Counted from the first letter of the stretch, positions 6,241 through 17,740 are shown. The stretch: 64,000 bases of DNA from Bugula neritina (GCA_964035545.1 OZ037767.1:26118628-26182627); one strand, 5' to 3'. The notes: generated from the sequence alone by a model not told the origin. A program made the numbers and translations.

Positions 6241-9200
6241 CTATGGGCCACCACAATCAACGGGATATCCTGAACATTCTGTCATCTTTTCTAGCCTAAG
6301 TTCTTCAACAAATATAAAGAACGAGGAGTTCCAACCTGTGTACGCGTTTCCAACTTGCATGCCTCTACATTCCATTGTGTTGTATGTAATAGACCTTGTT
6401 CCTGGTAGCACATCATGGCAGATGCCACTTACTAAAAACATACAGGTGCATGCAGGTGGTTTATATTTCAATGTGCAAGCAAGCAAGCAATAAGAATCAA
6501 GTTGCAGCACAGATCATGGTATGCTGCATACCATTTTGTGAACAATTGCATGTGTATAGCTTAAAATAAAATATTGTAATAACTTTCCATGCTTTTTATC
6601 ATGCAGTTTTCCAAGCTATTTTACATTTACTATGTTAACTAATGCTACTATACTATGTGTTAATTTGGCATTTAAAATCATATTTAACTCATCCTTCTTG
6701 GATGATGAAATATAGCAGCACAATAATTTTTGTTTTACAGTAATTATCGTACCTTGCATAGGGTGATGATAAACGTTGGCATAGTTTATATAACTTTGAC
6801 CTGATATTTCACCTGGTGATGAGCAAGGAGAACCATCTATTTCAAAATACCTGTCAAAAGTATTCATTGACATTTCATTTCATAATCTCAATAAAATAAT
6901 TGGGAATTAGCGTTGTAAGCATTTAAAAGTTTAAATTATATTCATTCATGTTAGTTGATGAGGGTCTAGCCAGTTTTATGCCTAGCATTTATAGAACATT
7001 TACATAATCTGTCTTTAGTCTGGAAAAGGCGTGAACGTTTAACAGACATAAAAAGAGACTAACCCTAATGTATTTAGCTATGAAATACACTAACAATTGC
7101 AGCTGATGTCATGGAAAATTTATTTCCAATATTTATTTTCAGCTTCGTTTGACAGAGTCAACTTATAAATTCTGAAGAACTATATTTATTGTAGTAAATC
7201 GCTTTTTCTAATTGAAATTATTGCAAACAACTTCATGAAAATATTTCATTATCGGTAAAATAAATCAGCTAATCAACCAATTAATTGTTAAGAACATAAT
7301 AATTGTACAGATTTTAATTAATTAAACTAAAAGAATTTGCCAAACTTTGATTGAAATTAAGCCAAAGTTGAGTAAATTTAACTGCGCATAAATAAGCTAA
7401 AGAGAAATGTGAAAAAGAAATGTGAAAGAGAAACGTGAAAGAGAAATGTGAAATAGAAATGTGAAAGAGAAATATAAACTTCTTGTAAGACAATAACAGA
7501 TATGTGTTGAGTGACATGCTTAAGCCAACAGTATGAACTATGACTGGGTATATTATAGAGACATACCACTTGACACAGCAATTTCCTGAGCCAGATCCAG
7601 CAGACTTGTGAGCACCTGTTGAGGTGAGTCGAAGCGCTGTATCAGCAAACTGCTTGTCATAGCTCACTGTCACGATAGTGCCATCATCCGTGTCATCATT
7701 TAATGAAGGCCAATAATAACTTTGCAAGTGACCAACCAAGCTTCTGTAGATTTGCTGTTGACTGCCATAAACTAAAACATGATAATTTATAATTGTAGTA
7801 ACTTCCTTTTGTGTTATGTTAAACTGATGCTGGTATAAAAACTTGCAGGCATTCTACACTCAAGTCATAATTGAATTTTGTACTTCTAATTAGCAAGTCT
7901 GCAATTTCTATTTACTAAAATAGATCAATTCTTTTTAGTTTGAAAAGCATAATCTGTGTACTGTTTGTTCTGGCTAAAATTCTCAAGCGTTGGAAAACCG
8001 GGAGTTGGTTTTCAAAAGAATTATTGCTATTTGTGCAAATCTTGCATAGCTCTATCACTGTGATTTCTAACAACTGGCAATATATAATGCGTGTATGTAT
8101 TTATATAAATGAATAGCACTTAAAGGCTCTTAATGTATTCATTTATGTGAAATATATATAAATACATGCAGGAGATATAATGCAGATATTTAGTTGATAA
8201 TAATAATTTCCTACTTGTACGAAGCACAAGATAAAGTAAGGAACAAAAGACACATAGTAGTCGTCTTACCAGCATCCACTCTTTGCTGAGATCTTACTTC
8301 TTCTATATGTATTCTAGAAGGGGAGTTGAAACCACCCGTAACAAAATGGGTTGGTTCACTGTTATCATCTATGCATTTGCCCAAGTATATTTCTACACTG
8401 TAGACACCAGATGGCAGTTGGTTCTCACAAATGCCTTCAACTGAACACCATATGGGTTAATATCACTCAAAGTGTACACAGTAACAGAGTGTACACAGTA
8501 ACAGAGTGTATGTATGCTGAGTGAAAAAAGGTGTATGCAGCAGCAAAGTGTATACAGTGGGTAGCAAAGTGTATACAGCAGGTAGCAAAGTGTATACAGT
8601 GGGTAGCAAAGTGTATACAGCAGGTAGCAAAGTGTATACAGTAGGTAGCAAAGTGTATACAGCAGGTAGCAAAGTGTATACAGTAGGTAGCAAAGTGTAT
8701 ACAGCAGGTAGCAAAGTGTATACAGTAGGTAGCAAAGTGTATACAGTAGGTAACAAAGCAAATCAGCAATCATTCAAATATTTCCTTGGTCAGTGCAAAT
8801 GCAATTTTAATCATATAGGAAAAGGTAAAGCAATAGGTTTATATTTGCACCAATAAATATGCCTAAATTTACAATATTGTTTACTATAACTGGTTGTTGA
8901 AAATGATGAGTTTGGTAAACACTGCCCTGCATTAAATCTGTTTAACTTCATATGATTCTGAACAGAAAAAAAACAAAGAGGCACTTAAATAATACCTGTA
9001 CGAACCAGGGTTGGGGTCAATTACATGTAAATGTAATTAATTACAATTACAATTACATGAAGATTTGTCAATTACAATTACAATTATAATTACAGTTGAA
9101 AATAAATGTAATTAATTACAATTACAATTACATGGCAATGTAATTAATTACAATTACAATTACTTTTGTTCTCGCAAGGAATAAATAGAAGTTACTTCTA

Positions 9201-15200: not shown

Positions 15201-17740
15201 TCAATTGTTTTCACACTAACAATCTTGGAGAAGTGAAACATATAGCACCATAATACTTGTGCTAAGAACTAGTTTTACATTTATATGGTTGCAGTCCTGT
15301 TCTTCTATTCATGGTATTAAATTCAGGTTTCATTATGAAAAACTCATGCTAAAACTATATATTTACAATGTTAGCATTTTGGTGCCAACTATAAGATTTT
15401 TAATACCATAAATTACATTATAGTTTAGGTTTGATAAGTATGTAAATTAGTTGCTCTTTTTTATTTTAGTCCTTTATTGCTTTATCACAATAACTAAGCC
15501 TCACTTCAAGCGCACACTTGTTTACGATAGATAATCCATAGAACAGCTCTTATTCCTAATTGCTTAGACTAAAATAAACTCTGCCACAAAGCTCCAATTT
15601 CCTGAGTAGAAAACAGATAAAAGGATTCTGCGATGGATGGCTATCAGAAATACTATATCAATAATAAATCAAATTCTTATTTTGAAATAAATTACTTTTC
15701 TGACGTCATAAACCGGTAAGAATTTCTTTTGTTGGTATGTGCTACATATAATTGTAAAGGCAAGTCCATAGAGTGTGTTTAGTAAACGAATACTTGGTGA
15801 AAACTTAATTTGCTTATGGAAATATTAATTTACAAGTTCATAGAAATATCCATACACCATGCAAATATAAAGCATACATGTATAGCGGCTACACTGTATC
15901 ACAAAGCTAACTTTAGTGTCTGCTAACAATATCTGTTAAGAATTTACAAGGAGCATGTCATTTTTAGCAGCCCTATACTCTATATATTACAAATTATTTT
16001 CTAAATTTTGCTTTTTAATATGAATGATTCTTTAAAACTAGGATGGATATTGTAAATTTGTTAATGATTAAATCTATAGCAAAGTAAGTTTAAGCTGTTA
16101 ATTGATTTAGCATAACTTAATTACAATAAGTCTATATATGATAATTGACGATATGAAAAAGTCTGTCAATAAATTTATTATGCTAAGGCTAAAGCTATAG
16201 CAAATGGATGCTGTATAGCCCTTTTTAGTTATTGATTTTTAGATTATGCATATTTATATAAAATTTTTGTTATAACATCTAATATATTATAATATGTATA
16301 TATAAATATATTATAGGTGAGTATGATTTTATTTAAATATCCTGAAGATAATGTTGATTTTTATTTTGAATTGTAATACCTTTTCTACACAAACGAATTA
16401 GAATATTTTTAGACTGATATATTGATGCATTAGGTATAGGTTAGCAATAATAATGTTGCTACACTTTGCAAACACATGCACACAATATAACATACTACTA
16501 GCTGTGTACAATATTACCGCAGTATGTGCTATATTTCTAAACTGGCAATTGATATAATTTAGTCCCAGTTCACGTTTTAGTTTCTAAATAGAAAAAAATT
16601 TTGTAATAAAAGATTTCAAATAGCTAGAACAGTAGATACTCTTAAAACTATATTGCCAGTTTTTGCTGACTCCTAATTTATAATGACTGTAATTTGTAAC
16701 CACTTTGATTTTTTTAGTATACCAGTAGACAAAGCCTATAGTTGATGATATAATATTATATTATCAACTTGAACAGTTTCCAGTTGTGCAAATTATAGCT
16801 TCATAGCGATGGGGCCTACTTTTTGACTTTTTGTACGGAGCCTCTTTATGAGGTAGATTAGAATATGAGTATATGCTAAATAAGCTAAATAATTGAATAA
16901 TTGATTATATGAATTATTTAGTGTTTATATCCCATAAATAACTGTATATGAGCTATATTTGGCGTCTTACACTATTGAGTAAAAACTAGAAATCCTTCGT
17001 GACCCGCTGACCTTTATACTGACCTTGCTGCCGCTCTTAGAAAAACTCACCATCTTGTGTGTAGAATGCTGCCTGACATGCATTCTTTGAGCTGATACAG
17101 TTCACCACACACTCTAGCTTACTTCTAGCATCAACTATCCTGTCCACTTCTGCACTCTGTTCAGATAAATCGACATTCTTCTCAACTGGAATTTTGCTGG
17201 TTGTACAGCTCCCCAAGTCTAAAAGAGCAACTTTTACTTTTGCAGATTGTACAGAGCACCAAGAGATAAAACTTGAAGACTGGATTGCTTTTGTCTGATA
17301 TAATCATTATAGCTACATATCATTTTGGTCTACAGATACCGTGATCATTTCAATAATAGTAAAATTTTAAATACAATAAAAATGTATTTTGAAAGATGTT
17401 TATAGGCATCTTCTATTACTAACTATAGGTATTACCACAGCCATATTGATTAATGGTTAAATATATAGTTCATAAACATAGTTTCTATTTGGGTTTCCTC
17501 ATTAGTATCTAGCCTTTTTTATAGCATAGACTACTCATACAATGGTTCATAGTCAATAAAGCTACTTAACCTACAAAAATTATACTGCTGAACTATTTTA
17601 TATAACAAAGTAAGGGTGGCTAATGGTTTCACCCTAAATTTCAAGCCTGAGGTCACCCTACCTAAGGCTGATTCAGTTGATCCGTTGAGAGTGAGCAGTA
17701 GGATGCTGTAAACAAACCCTTCAACTCCTTTCAGCTTCAT
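6241..17740 (-). CDS. Secreted protein: signal peptide + PAN/apple-like domain + Cys-rich linker + 3 tandem CTHRC1 C-terminal domains (~627 aa); exon 10 interrupted by a MITE in this haplotype
   Basis: 14 phase-compatible exons: 17740-17662, 17218-17051, 15030-14936, 14528-14438, 13555-13455, 13051-12853, 12464-12309, 11377-11265, 10810-10704, 10246-10139 plus 8997-8996, 8440-8270, 7771-7567, 6850-6753, 6431-6241. PAN-like motif SKLECVVNCISSKNACQAAFYTQDGVCHHL. Three CTHRC1-type repeats: CNHWYLTFNGNKC..IDGTCYG..TGWQ; CGRWYIGVNGSEC..VEGICE..TGGFNSPSRIHIEE; CCVKWYFEIDGSPC..SGICH..TGWNSSFFIFVEE. Compare human CTHRC1 CCQRWYFTFNGAEC..VEGLCEG..TGWNSVSRIIIEE. Confidence 0.85.
7400..7472. repeat. 13-bp tandem repeat (aaagagaaatgtg), ~5 copies
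   Basis: Direct reading; intronic. Confidence 0.8.
8541..8752. repeat. 21-bp minisatellite (gtagcaaagtgtatacagYRg), ~10 copies
   Basis: Direct reading; intronic; explains the repetitive ORFs at 8393-8856. Confidence 0.95.
9006..10138. mobile_element. Non-autonomous hAT-type DNA transposon (MITE), 1133 bp
   Basis: Perfect 12-bp TIR CAGGGTTGGGGT, perfect 8-bp TSD GTACGAAC (8998-9005 and 10139-10146), and subterminal (AATTAC)n arrays at both ends. An 8-bp TSD with CAG termini is typical of hAT. Confidence 0.92.
9258..9880. mobile_element. Older MITE with ~200-bp imperfect TIRs nested inside the hAT element
   Basis: Left gtcattccatacca...tgtctcagattttgctcatatttacactaaatggacctacac matches the right-end reverse complement gggtcattccatgcca...cgtctcagattttgttaatgtttacaccaaatagacctacac. 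Confidence 0.75.
10490..10662. repeat. 16/32-bp tandem repeat (atataatacaattggc atataatacaatagag)
   Basis: Direct reading; intronic. Confidence 0.85.
13112..13168. repeat. Perfect 26-bp inverted repeat with 5-nt loop
   Basis: caaaaaaaattagaatatactagaat-gcttt-attctagtatattctaattttttttg. Confidence 0.9.
14576..14920. repeat. Compound microsatellite, (TGTGTGTTG)n grading into (TG)n
   Basis: Direct reading. Confidence 0.95.

What the first reader, a model, noticed from the sequence alone, without database searches (positions are those of the whole stretch)
6241..17740. Collagen-free secreted protein with a PAN/apple domain and three tandem CTHRC1 C-terminal domains
Seen: 14 exons join in phase into a ~627-aa protein with a signal peptide, a PAN-like Cys pattern, a short Cys-rich linker (CNGMECSNNEICFLGC..C) and three divergent CTHRC1-C repeats. 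There is no Gly-X-Y stretch. Known: vertebrate CTHRC1 has one such domain after a short collagen helix, trimerises, and acts as a Wnt/PCP co-factor. Inference: three domains on one chain could form a single-chain pseudo-trimer that makes the helix unnecessary, while PAN adds a protein- or glycan-binding module. This would be an unusual architecture for a signalling modulator or recognition protein. It is invisible in the ORF track and is the best candidate here for an undescribed system.
Basis: partly seen in the sequence, partly recalled or inferred. Interest (0 to 1): 0.8.

Follow-up and report, generated by a model that had tools for sequence, protein, structure and literature searches.

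The report
Single-chain triple CTHRC1-head secreted protein gene
This is a real 14-exon animal gene for a secreted protein whose three different CTHRC1 domains probably fold into one C1q-like "trimer" on a single chain; this copy carries a mobile-element insertion at one splice site, and the family is unstudied though already met elsewhere in this genome.

Summary
On the minus strand, 14 GT-AG exons (17740 to 6241) join in phase. They encode a signal peptide, a PAN-like Cys module, a Cys-rich linker and three complete CTHRC1_C domains that are 26-28% identical to each other. There is no Gly-X-Y run.

RNA-seq contigs show four of my predicted junctions, including both joints between domains, so this is one transcript. 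All eight listed exon differences from the window are synonymous.

A 1,133-bp hAT-like element with an 8-bp target duplication sits 2 nt before the exon-10 donor. Without it the protein is 627 aa. With it, only a weak cryptic donor keeps the frame (625 aa).

The gene lies in a 34-kb tandem array of three copies. The oldest copy is intact and lacks the element.

I could not fold the window protein itself. Models of two relatives, including Lingula, superpose on engineered single-chain C1q and adiponectin trimers (Z 24-26 over about 340 residues).

The nearest natural analogue is the bivalve "multi-C1q" proteins. I read this as a recognition protein: a new variant of a known kind. This scan has already reported the family on other DNA of this genome.

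The parts
17662..17740 (-). Exon 1: ATG and signal-peptide-like N-terminus (MKLKGVEGFVYSILLLTLNGSTESAL); donor TAG|GTAGGG, phase 1
   Evidence: Sequence read. It aligns with the signal peptides of relatives. No signal-peptide predictor was available.
17051..17218 (-). Exon 2: first part of the PAN-like module (C..C...C.....C.AAFY)
   Evidence: Local BLASTP of the N-terminus against Lingula P0004 gives E 1.5e-6. No Pfam hit for the exon alone.
14936..15030 (-). Exon 3: end of the PAN-like module (GVCHHLEG...)
   Evidence: It is phase-compatible with exons 2 and 4.
14438..14528 (-). Exon 4: Cys-rich linker (CNGMECSNNEICFLGC...C); weak donor TTAG|GTATCG
   Evidence: The Cys spacing matches relatives. 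No RNA evidence for this junction.
13455..13555 (-). Exon 5: start of CTHRC1_C domain 1
12853..13051 (-). Exon 6: middle of domain 1 (C.HWYLTFNG..C motif)
   Evidence: Pfam PF25815, 34.1 bits, profile positions 27-83.
12309..12464 (-). Exon 7: end of domain 1 and linker
   Evidence: Pfam PF25815, 40.3 bits, profile positions 94-137. An RNA joint runs to exon 8 in run X2, 11377 to about 12311, with 2 odd letters (table 5c).
11265..11377 (-). Exon 8: start of domain 2
   Evidence: An RNA contig covers 11264-11377, and the joint 10810|11265 appears in X1 and X2 but not in the DNA run X3.
10704..10810 (-). Exon 9: domain 2, ending inside the Trp codon of the RW|Y motif (phase 2)
   Evidence: RNA joint.
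10139..10246 (-). Exon 10: domain 2. Its last two bases (AG, now at 8997-8996) and its true donor ACAG|GTATTA are displaced by the insertion. The cryptic in-frame donor GTTC|GTACCA follows 10143.
   Evidence: The empty site is seen in a DNA contig of X3 and in copy A.
9006..10138 (.). Non-autonomous hAT-like element, 1,133 bp. Terminal inverted repeat CAGGGTTGGGGT; 8-bp target duplication GTACGAAC at 8998-9005 and 10139-10146. It holds a nested palindromic element (89-nt arms at 9304-9392 and 9753-9841).
   Evidence: Word depth is 10^4-10^5 in X3, against about 300 for the flanks. It is absent from copy A and from an X3 contig whose flanks are identical to the window.
8270..8440 (-). Exon 11: end of domain 2 and linker
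   Evidence: Pfam PF25815, 20.2 bits. An RNA contig covers 8270-8429. The joint 7771|8270 appears in X1 and X2 only. Seven of seven listed differences are synonymous.
7567..7771 (-). Exon 12: first half of domain 3, ending inside the Trp codon (phase 2), as in domain 2
   Evidence: An RNA contig covers 7564-7771, with joints at both ends.
6753..6850 (-). Exon 13: middle of domain 3 (YFEIDGSPC)
   Evidence: RNA joint 6850|7567; sequence.
6241..6431 (-). Exon 14: end of domain 3, a 16-aa Cys-bearing tail, and the TAG stop at 6243-6241
   Evidence: Pfam PF25815, 33.9 bits; sequence.
6196..6201 (-). AATAAA about 40 nt after the stop: possible polyadenylation signal
   Evidence: Read; inspection only.
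1..29723 (.). Last unit of a tandem array with a 34,141-bp period that carries the gene. It is 99.96% identical to the unit just upstream of the window.

Best explanation
This is a protein-coding gene of a lophophorate-type animal. Earlier scan notes call it Bugula-like; I did not verify that.

The protein has a signal peptide, a small PAN/apple-like disulphide module, a Cys-rich linker and three diverged CTHRC1 C-terminal domains joined by linkers of 14-15 residues. There is no collagen stalk.

Vertebrate CTHRC1 brings three identical C1q-like heads together through a collagen helix. Here one chain supplies all three heads, which pack around a pseudo-threefold axis into a single asymmetric C1q/TNF-like globule. 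That step is inferred from models of relatives.

The most likely role is soluble recognition: lectin-like or pattern-recognition binding at the head. The N-terminal Cys modules would act as a second binding or anchoring part. That step rests on analogy with bivalve multi-C1q proteins and on the shape of the gene family.

The gene is one of three tandem copies and belongs to a family with at least 53 detected domain ends in this genome. The window copy and its 99.94%-identical neighbour carry a polymorphic hAT-like insertion 2 nt before the exon-10 donor. This probably cripples these alleles. Copy A, and an allele seen in DNA reads that lacks the element, remain intact.
For: Gene structure:
- Fourteen exons are in phase with GT-AG borders.
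- Spliced joints at exactly the predicted borders e7|e8, e8|e9, e11|e12 and e12|e13 appear in the RNA-seq contigs of X1 and X2 and not in the DNA run X3.
- Eight of eight listed exon differences between those contigs and the window are synonymous third-position changes. An intron-covering contig differs at 26 of 326 bases.

Domains:
- PF25815 hits are found exon by exon, and the local HMM finds three complete domains.

Architecture elsewhere:
- Lingula XP_013395411, XP_013395410 and XP_013399537, and a 2.6-kb transcript-like contig (P0005), have PAN_1 plus three CTHRC1_C domains.
- On a domain tree the D1/D2/D3 labels need only the minimum of 2 changes, against a shuffled mean of 9.4. The D1 domains form one group at 82/83 support. 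The triplication therefore predates the split from Lingula.

Packing:
- P0005 residues 150-611: pLDDT 83, pTM 0.88. Z 24.9 at 3.4 A over 340 residues to 5HZF, 24.4 to 4DOU, 23.1 to 5KCA and 20.6 to 4ZCH; the next hit is at Z 7.3.
- Lingula P0004: Z 25.8 to 5HZF.
- The three separated domains of P0005 scored ipSAE 0.37 against a best control of 0.13. The tool calls this 'weak support'. That mark was reached by 51 of 78 solved complexes and 2 of 108 mismatched pairs, but a pass at 0.60 or under, as here, came from only 5 of those 78 solved complexes and from all 4 mismatches that passed (of 180). The runs agree in at least 94% of their contacts, and the partner's pLDDT is at least 82.

Function by analogy:
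[quoted passage not shown] HcC1qDC6 has three gC1q domains and an immune role (PMC5519582). All three C1q domains of HcC1qDC5 bind LPS and PGN (PMC10672478).
- This genome gives 89 CTHRC1_C matches but one C1q match.
- Single domains of the models also resemble the TNF-like lectins PLTL and BC2L-C at Z about 6.6.
Against: - The window protein itself was not folded. The models are of relatives only 30-33% identical to it.
- AlphaFold may pack any three C1q-like domains as a trimer from memory of homotrimers, and the controlled complex test passed only weakly.
- PAN is not detectable in the window's exons by Pfam. The N-terminal 160 residues of the Lingula model have low confidence.
- There are no ligand, tissue or induction data.
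- The RNA comes from another strain or a sibling species (94-98% identity). It matches neither the window copy nor copy A.
- Junctions e1 to e7 and e10|e11 have no RNA evidence here.
- By identity, domain 1 does not match its positional counterparts best.
Confidence: 0.65

Rival explanations
1. It is a signalling modulator like vertebrate CTHRC1. The single-chain head would bind Frizzled/Ror2-Wnt or TGF-beta pathway components and tune morphogenesis or regeneration in the colony.
For: It shares the CTHRC1_C domain. Leclere et al. suggest a conserved signalling role and note that groups with many Cthrc1 genes regenerate well (PMC7058181).
Against: Signalling cofactors are usually few and conserved. 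Here there are dozens of fast-diverging, tandemly duplicated genes, with segregating mobile-element disruption. The domains are only 26-28% identical to each other. No receptor-binding residues are known that could be compared.
Confidence: 0.12
2. It is a structural or adhesive matrix protein of the cuticle, zooecium or larval adhesive. The compact heads and Cys-rich modules would cross-link a matrix.
For: It is secreted and Cys-rich: 27 Cys, including a C-terminal Cys-bearing tail. C1q-like NC1 heads occur in the network collagens VIII and X (PMC7058181). RNA contig depth on the exons is fairly high, though contig depth is a poor measure of expression.
Against: There are no repetitive or low-complexity matrix-type stretches and no collagen. 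A single-chain head lacks the multivalent stalks that build networks.
Confidence: 0.13
3. The three domains do not form an intrachain trimer. They act as independent modules or swap between chains to build larger oligomers, and the predicted packing is a modelling habit.
For: The complex test gave only weak support (0.37 against a best control of 0.13). No structure exists for any family member.
Against: pTM is 0.88 for a 462-residue three-domain chain, and the Lingula protein gives the same packing. The short linkers are conserved at 8-15 residues in all relatives. The position-specific divergence of D1, D2 and D3 is old. The tree also shows separate origins of multi-domain arrays in Oscarella (four domains) and in metagenomic proteins (three domains).
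Confidence: 0.15
4. The copy in this window is a dead allele, or the B and C copies are an assembly duplicate. The insertion would send splicing to the stronger donor inside the element (GGG|GTAATT after 10129), shift the frame and stop the protein at residue 425.
For: The insertion lies 2 nt before the donor. The donor inside the element fits the consensus better than the in-frame cryptic one. Copies B and C are 99.96% identical over 29.7 kb. The contig of DNA run X3 crosses the empty site, with flanks identical to the window.
Against: The cryptic donor after 10143 keeps the frame and costs only two residues plus a V-to-L change; the domain-2 HMM score falls from 104.6 to 98.2. All other exons are intact. 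This rival concerns the allele, not the nature of the gene, and is compatible with the best explanation.
Confidence: 0.55

Closest known systems
[quoted passage not shown] 2020 (PMC7058181)
   Same: The C-terminal domain is the same (Pfam PF25815). Both are secreted. The head was modelled there as a C1q-like jelly roll able to form trimers.
   Different: The family is defined by a collagen GXY stalk plus one head. Here there is no stalk. There are three diverged heads in tandem plus N-terminal PAN-like and Cys-rich modules. That paper's main text mentions no multi-head or Lingula triple proteins.
Bivalve multi-C1q proteins ('smultiC1q', three gC1q domains in most cases; for example HcC1qDC6, HcC1qDC5, CfC1qDC-2)
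   Same: They are secreted, lack collagen, and carry three jelly-roll heads of the same superfold on one chain. They belong to large, tandemly duplicated lophotrochozoan families. These are the natural analogue of the design (PMC6835236, PMC5519582, PMC10672478).
   Different: The domain family differs. The window's exon pieces give no Pfam C1q match at E up to 1. No PAN-like module is reported for them. They occur in molluscs, in whose genomes Leclere et al. could not identify Cthrc1 (PMC7058181), whereas this genome shows one C1q match and 89 CTHRC1_C matches. Those papers do not, as far as I read, describe intrachain trimer packing.
Engineered single-chain trimers: C1q globular head (5HKJ, 5HZF; PMC4774423), adiponectin (4DOU), APRIL-BAFF-BAFF (4ZCH)
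   Same: These are the best structural matches for the whole three-domain models, at Z 20.6-25.8 over 337-351 residues. Three heads are joined by short linkers into one globule.
   Different: They are man-made fusions of chains that normally assemble from separate polypeptides. Sequence identity to the models is 6-8%.
Lingula anatina uncharacterized proteins LOC106162620 and LOC106165752
   Same: They have the same architecture, PAN_1 plus three CTHRC1_C domains, and the same family; their D1 domains group with the window's D1.
   Different: They are 30% identical over the three-domain region (P0004), come from another phylum, and have no functional annotation.

Membership tests
CTHRC1 family (Leclere et al. 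2020) | CTHRC1 C-terminal domain (Pfam PF25815) | tested here: met
   Exon pieces score 34.1, 40.3 and 33.9 bits against a cut-off of 27, and 20.2 bits for the end of domain 2. The local HMM finds three full domains.
CTHRC1 family (Leclere et al. 2020) | Collagen triple-helix (GXY) stretch before the head | tested here: not met
   The longest GXY run in the joined model is 2. The PAN-type relatives have no Pfam Collagen hit.
CTHRC1 family (Leclere et al. 2020) | One head per chain, with trimerisation through the collagen helix | tested here: not met
   There are three heads per chain on one transcript.
C1q/TNF-like trimeric jelly-roll heads (fold level) | Ten-stranded jelly-roll beta-sandwich packed three-fold | tested here: inconclusive
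   This is met in AlphaFold models of two relatives: Z 24.9 and 25.8 to 5HZF, with all three domains aligned. The window protein itself was not folded, and the complex test gave weak support.
C1q domain family (Pfam PF00386) | Sequence match to the C1q profile | tested here: not met
   No C1q hit at E up to 1 on any of the ten exon pieces scanned.
PAN/apple domain (Pfam PF00024) | Profile match over the gathering score | tested here: inconclusive
   The window exon piece gives no hit. Relatives P0004, P0005, P0001 and P0013 score 21.7-25.8 bits against a cut-off of 21.4. The window N-terminus aligns to them with conserved Cys residues. The fold has low confidence in the Lingula model.
Secreted protein | N-terminal signal peptide | not testable with these tools
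   By eye there is a basic start followed by the hydrophobic run FVYSILLLTL, and it aligns with the signal peptides of relatives. No predictor was on hand.
hAT-type non-autonomous transposon (the insertion) | 8-bp target duplication, short terminal inverted repeats starting CAGGG, many copies | tested here: met
   Target duplication GTACGAAC and 12-nt inverted repeat CAGGGTTGGGGT. Depth is 10^4-10^5 against about 300 for the flanks. An empty site was seen. The likeness to Ac/Ds ends is from my own knowledge. No transposase was searched for.

The most novel reading that the evidence does not exclude
Lophophorates (bryozoans and brachiopods) evolved a natural single-chain heterotrimer of CTHRC1 heads and expanded it into a diversified recognition repertoire. 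It would fill the niche that hundreds of C1q-domain lectins fill in bivalves. The three fixed, non-equivalent heads would give each protein an asymmetric binding surface that a homotrimer cannot have.
Probability: 0.35. Interest if true: 0.65.

Novelty: new variant of a known kind. Interest (0 to 1): 0.5.

Why it matters
C1q/TNF-like heads normally need three chains and a stalk or coiled coil to assemble. Protein engineers fuse them into single chains to control which subunits combine. A natural, ancient single-chain version, built from the little-understood CTHRC1 head, offers three things.

- It would be a tractable monomeric form for solving the first CTHRC1-head structure and for finding its ligands. 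That would also help the vertebrate CTHRC1 field, which covers fibrosis and cancer.
- It shows a second lophotrochozoan lineage arriving at the three-heads-on-one-chain design known from bivalve C1q proteins.
- It suggests that bryozoans and brachiopods use CTHRC1 heads where molluscs use C1q heads.

The segregating mobile-element allele provides a natural loss-of-function or variant allele for testing function.

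Tried and rejected
- **Solved structures.** A search with the domain-1 end exon found nothing.
- **Pfam on other pieces.** The PAN exon, the Cys-rich exon and several middle exons gave no family at E up to 1.
- **Homologue search.** The search for homologous proteins with P0005 returned only P0005 itself and one Lingula protein, because of the limits of the word index. 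It says little about distribution.
- **Closer relatives.** No full-length relative closer than about 33% is in the library. The only near-identical hit is a 49-aa exon ORF.
- **Donor at 10129.** I first took GGG|GTAATT after 10129 as the exon-10 donor. It breaks the frame and turned out to lie inside the transposon.
- **Source of the RNA.** I tested whether the RNA contigs come from copy A. Only 8 of 34 differences fit, so they come from another strain or a sibling species.
- **Three separate genes.** Rejected by the RNA joints e7|e8 and e11|e12.
- **Complex prediction.** The three separated domains gave 'weak support': 0.37 against a best control of 0.13; the mark was reached by 51 of 78 solved complexes and 2 of 108 mismatches, but a pass at 0.60 or under is rated more often wrong than right unless the guess was likely beforehand.
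- **Organism.** Its identity could not be verified, because run and organism names are coded.
- **Other ORFs.** The ORFs at 60061-60837, 61382-62179 and 46926-47678 have no Pfam family.

Full report
**What is in the sequence**

The window is AT-rich (about 32% GC) and the feature lies on the minus strand. I read the open segments and splice signals and obtained 14 exons:

| Exon | Coordinates |
|---|---|
| e1 | 17740-17662 |
| e2 | 17218-17051 |
| e3 | 15030-14936 |
| e4 | 14528-14438 |
| e5 | 13555-13455 |
| e6 | 13051-12853 |
| e7 | 12464-12309 |
| e8 | 11377-11265 |
| e9 | 10810-10704 |
| e10 | 10246-10143 or 10246-10139 |
| e11 | 8440-8270 |
| e12 | 7771-7567 |
| e13 | 6850-6753 |
| e14 | 6431-6241 |

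All internal borders are AG/GT and all phases agree.

The joined protein was built only inside scripts from window.fa. I used it there for frame checks, counts, local alignments and a local HMM made from fetched relatives. It was not handed to Pfam, the big searches or the structure predictor; that step is left out.

**Domains**

Pfam CTHRC1_C (PF25815, 137 positions, cut-off 27 bits) matches four exon pieces:

| Piece | Part of domain | Bits |
|---|---|---|
| 12833-13051 | middle of domain 1 | 34.1 |
| 12298-12504 | end of domain 1 | 40.3 |
| 8214-8456 | end of domain 2 | 20.2 (below cut-off) |
| 6244-6513 | end of domain 3 | 33.9 |

A domain HMM built locally from fetched family members finds three complete domains in the joined model, at aa 156-291, 306-457 and 473-611, scoring 90-105 bits each. 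The domains are only 26-28% identical to each other. The linkers are 14 and 15 residues long. The longest Gly-X-Y run is two, so there is no collagen stretch.

The N-terminus reads as a signal peptide by eye and aligns with those of relatives.

The PAN label is weaker. The window's exon 2 piece has no Pfam hit. Four relatives pass PAN_1 narrowly, at 21.7-25.8 bits against a cut-off of 21.4, and the window's Cys pattern aligns with theirs.

**One transcript, under selection**

Two runs with 'METAGENOMIC RNA-Seq' libraries, recorded as a 'symbiont metagenome' (X1, X2), hold about 8% of the gene's words. A DNA run (X3) holds 92%.

I laid these on 6380-12379. X1 and X2, but not X3, show joints with GT..AG ends at exactly my borders:
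- 6850|7567 (e13/e12)
- 7771|8270 (e12/e11, which links domain 2 to domain 3)
- 10810|11265 (e9/e8)

In X2 there is also a joint from 11377 to about 12311 (e8/e7, which links domain 1 to domain 2), with two odd letters. These joints rule out three separate genes.

The RNA contigs are 94-98% identical to the window. They fit copy A no better (8 of 34 differences), so they come from another strain or a sibling species.

All eight exon differences that were listed are synonymous third-position changes. A contig that runs into the intron differs at 26 of 326 bases. The reading frame is therefore under purifying selection.

An X3 DNA contig joins 8997 directly to 10139, and its flanks are identical to the window. 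The skipped 1,141 bp consists of two parts:
- a 1,133-bp element at 9006-10138 with 12-nt inverted ends, CAGGGTTGGGGT;
- an 8-bp target duplication, GTACGAAC.

The element is very abundant, with word depth of 10^4-10^5 against about 300 for the flanks. It looks like a non-autonomous hAT-type element; the likeness to Ac/Ds ends is from my own knowledge.

The element sits 2 nt before the true donor, ACAG|GTATTA. The outcomes are:
- With it, the only in-frame choice is a weak cryptic donor inside the first copy of the target duplication, GTTC|GTACCA after 10143. This gives 625 aa, with RT-V replaced by L.
- The better-looking donor inside the element, after 10129, shifts the frame and stops at residue 425.

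No RNA from a carrier was available, so which donor is used is unknown.

**Genomic setting**

The window is G000:C3:26118628-26182627. Window 1-29723 is 99.96% identical to the stretch 34,141 bp upstream (copy B), which also has the element. Over the 14-kb gene region the two copies are 99.94% identical.

A third, older copy (A, about 68 kb upstream) lacks the element. It has an intact 627-aa frame with four amino-acid differences.

Copies B and C are so alike that an assembly duplicate cannot be excluded.

Genome-wide, PF25815 gives 89 exon-level matches in clusters on C9, C5, C3 and C6. Of these, 53 are domain ends. This suggests roughly 20-30 genes as a lower bound.

**Relatives**

A profile of the three domain-end exons, run against 1.84 billion representatives, found 273 proteins, several with three matched stretches.
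- Lingula anatina XP_013395411 and XP_013395410 (603 and 637 aa) and XP_013399537, plus a 611-aa ORF on a 2.6-kb transcript-like contig (P0005), all have PAN_1 plus three CTHRC1_C domains. They are unnamed or 'uncharacterized'.
- An Oscarella protein has collagen, four CTHRC1_C domains and FN2.
- Two metagenomic proteins carry three such domains.

In a careful domain tree:
- The metagenomic domains form one starred clade (100/99), and the Oscarella domains fall in a different part of the tree. These arrays therefore arose independently.
- The D1/D2/D3 labels of the PAN-type proteins need only the minimum of two changes, against a shuffled mean of 9.4.
- The D1 domains form one group at 82/83 support.
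- The window's D3 does not join the other D3 domains.

The differentiated triple therefore predates the split from the brachiopod, with moderate support.

**Fold**

P0005 residues 150-611, folded with a 33-row alignment, gave pLDDT 83 and pTM 0.88. Foldseek's top hits are engineered single-chain trimers. VIA-align results are:

| Entry | What it is | Z | rmsd | Aligned residues |
|---|---|---|---|---|
| 5HZF | single-chain C1q head | 24.9 | 3.4 A | 340 of 402 |
| 4DOU | single-chain adiponectin | 24.4 | 3.9 A | 344 of 399 |
| 5KCA | Cbln1 C1q trimer | 23.1 | 3.8 A | 351 of 807 |
| 4ZCH | single-chain APRIL-BAFF-BAFF | 20.6 | 3.9 A | 347 of 419 |
| next hit | single domain | 7.3 | 2.2 A | 120 of 144 |

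All three domains of the model are aligned in the top four rows.

Full-length Lingula P0004 gave pTM 0.72 and Z 25.8 to 5HZF. Its N-terminal 160 residues are poorly predicted.

As a controlled check, the three domains of P0005 given as separate chains scored ipSAE 0.37 against a best control of 0.13. The tool's verdict was 'weak support'. That mark was reached by 51 of 78 solved complexes and 2 of 108 mismatched pairs, but a pass at 0.60 or under, as here, came from only 5 of those 78 solved complexes and from all 4 mismatches that passed (of 180). The runs agree in at least 94% of their contacts, and the partner's pLDDT is at least 82. The calibration was on pairs of single chains, so the counts hold only roughly here.

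The pseudo-trimer is thus well supported in silico for relatives. It is carried over to the window protein by homology, at 30-33% identity.

**Comparison with what is known**

Leclere et al. 2020 (PMC7058181) define the Cthrc1 family as a collagen stretch plus one head. They showed by modelling that the head is C1q-like and can form trimers. Their main text mentions no multi-head proteins and no Lingula triples. [quoted passage not shown]

The window protein has the head domain but fails the collagen criterion and the one-head criterion. It is therefore a relative of CTHRC1 and not a member in that sense.

Earlier notes of this scan called the design 'known mainly from engineered proteins'. 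That needs correcting.
- Bivalves have a recognised class of secreted multi-C1q proteins: 21 genes in the eastern oyster, with three domains in most cases (PMC6835236).
- Characterised members include HcC1qDC6 (three tandem gC1q, immune response; PMC5519582). For HcC1qDC5, all three domains bind LPS and peptidoglycan (PMC10672478).

This genome shows one C1q match against 89 CTHRC1_C matches. That pattern mirrors the bivalve one.

No paper in the searchable library describes multi-CTHRC1_C proteins.

**Mechanism and verdict**

Shown:
- The gene, its splicing at four junctions, purifying selection, the three CTHRC1_C domains, and the absence of collagen.
- The transposon allele and the tandem array.
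- The same architecture in Lingula.

Inferred:
- Intrachain C1q-like packing, from models of relatives.
- Secretion.
- A recognition or lectin-like role, from analogy and family dynamics.

The Wnt/PCP idea has no support here. This is a further member of a family that this scan has already reported several times on other DNA of the same genome. It is an uncharacterised variant of a known kind, not a new kind of system.

Noticed in passing
window 1-29723 and G000:C3 26050629-26118627 (L001-L007): A tandem array with a 34,141-bp period. The unit in the window is 99.96% identical to the one upstream. A third, older unit is 94-99.6% identical; its 5' part (window 10135-29723) is much closer (99.6%) than its 3' part (94-96%). 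This suggests gene conversion or unequal crossing-over. Alternatively, B and C may be an assembly duplicate.
   Followed up: partly
window 9006-10138: A high-copy non-autonomous element with CAGGGTTGGGGT ends, AATTAC-rich subterminal repeats and a nested palindromic element (arms 9304-9392 and 9753-9841). RNA-seq contigs also contain many copies of it.
   Followed up: partly
window 14560-14930 and 8466-8773: A long (CA)n / (CACACAA)n microsatellite lies in intron 3. A minisatellite with a period of about 21 nt lies in the intron between exons 10 and 11. Both create long spurious ORFs in the ORF list.
   Followed up: no
window 58006-59196 and 62007-63197: A 1,191-bp inverted repeat, 99.3% identical, flanks two ORFs of 258 and 265 aa (60061-60837 and 61382-62179, minus strand) that have no Pfam family. 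It may be a mobile element with long inverted ends.
   Followed up: partly
G000 whole genome: Only one Pfam C1q match (C3:14740054-14740230) against 89 CTHRC1_C matches. This is the reverse of bivalves, which have hundreds of C1q-domain genes and in whose genomes Leclere et al. could not identify Cthrc1.
   Followed up: partly
P0017 (904 aa) and P0023 (1885 aa), JGI metagenome contigs; P0008 (Oscarella); P0014 (1400 aa): Other multi-CTHRC1_C architectures exist. Two metagenomic proteins end in three tandem domains that arose by their own triplication; one sits among tightly packed genes. A sponge protein has collagen, four domains and FN2. One protein combines CTHRC1_C with laminin-G, FN2, PAN and pentraxin domains.
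   Followed up: partly
window 7435-7593 and 7970-8299: The RNA-seq runs also hold lower-depth contigs that run through intron sequence next to exons 12 and 11. These are unspliced RNA or carried-over DNA.
   Followed up: no
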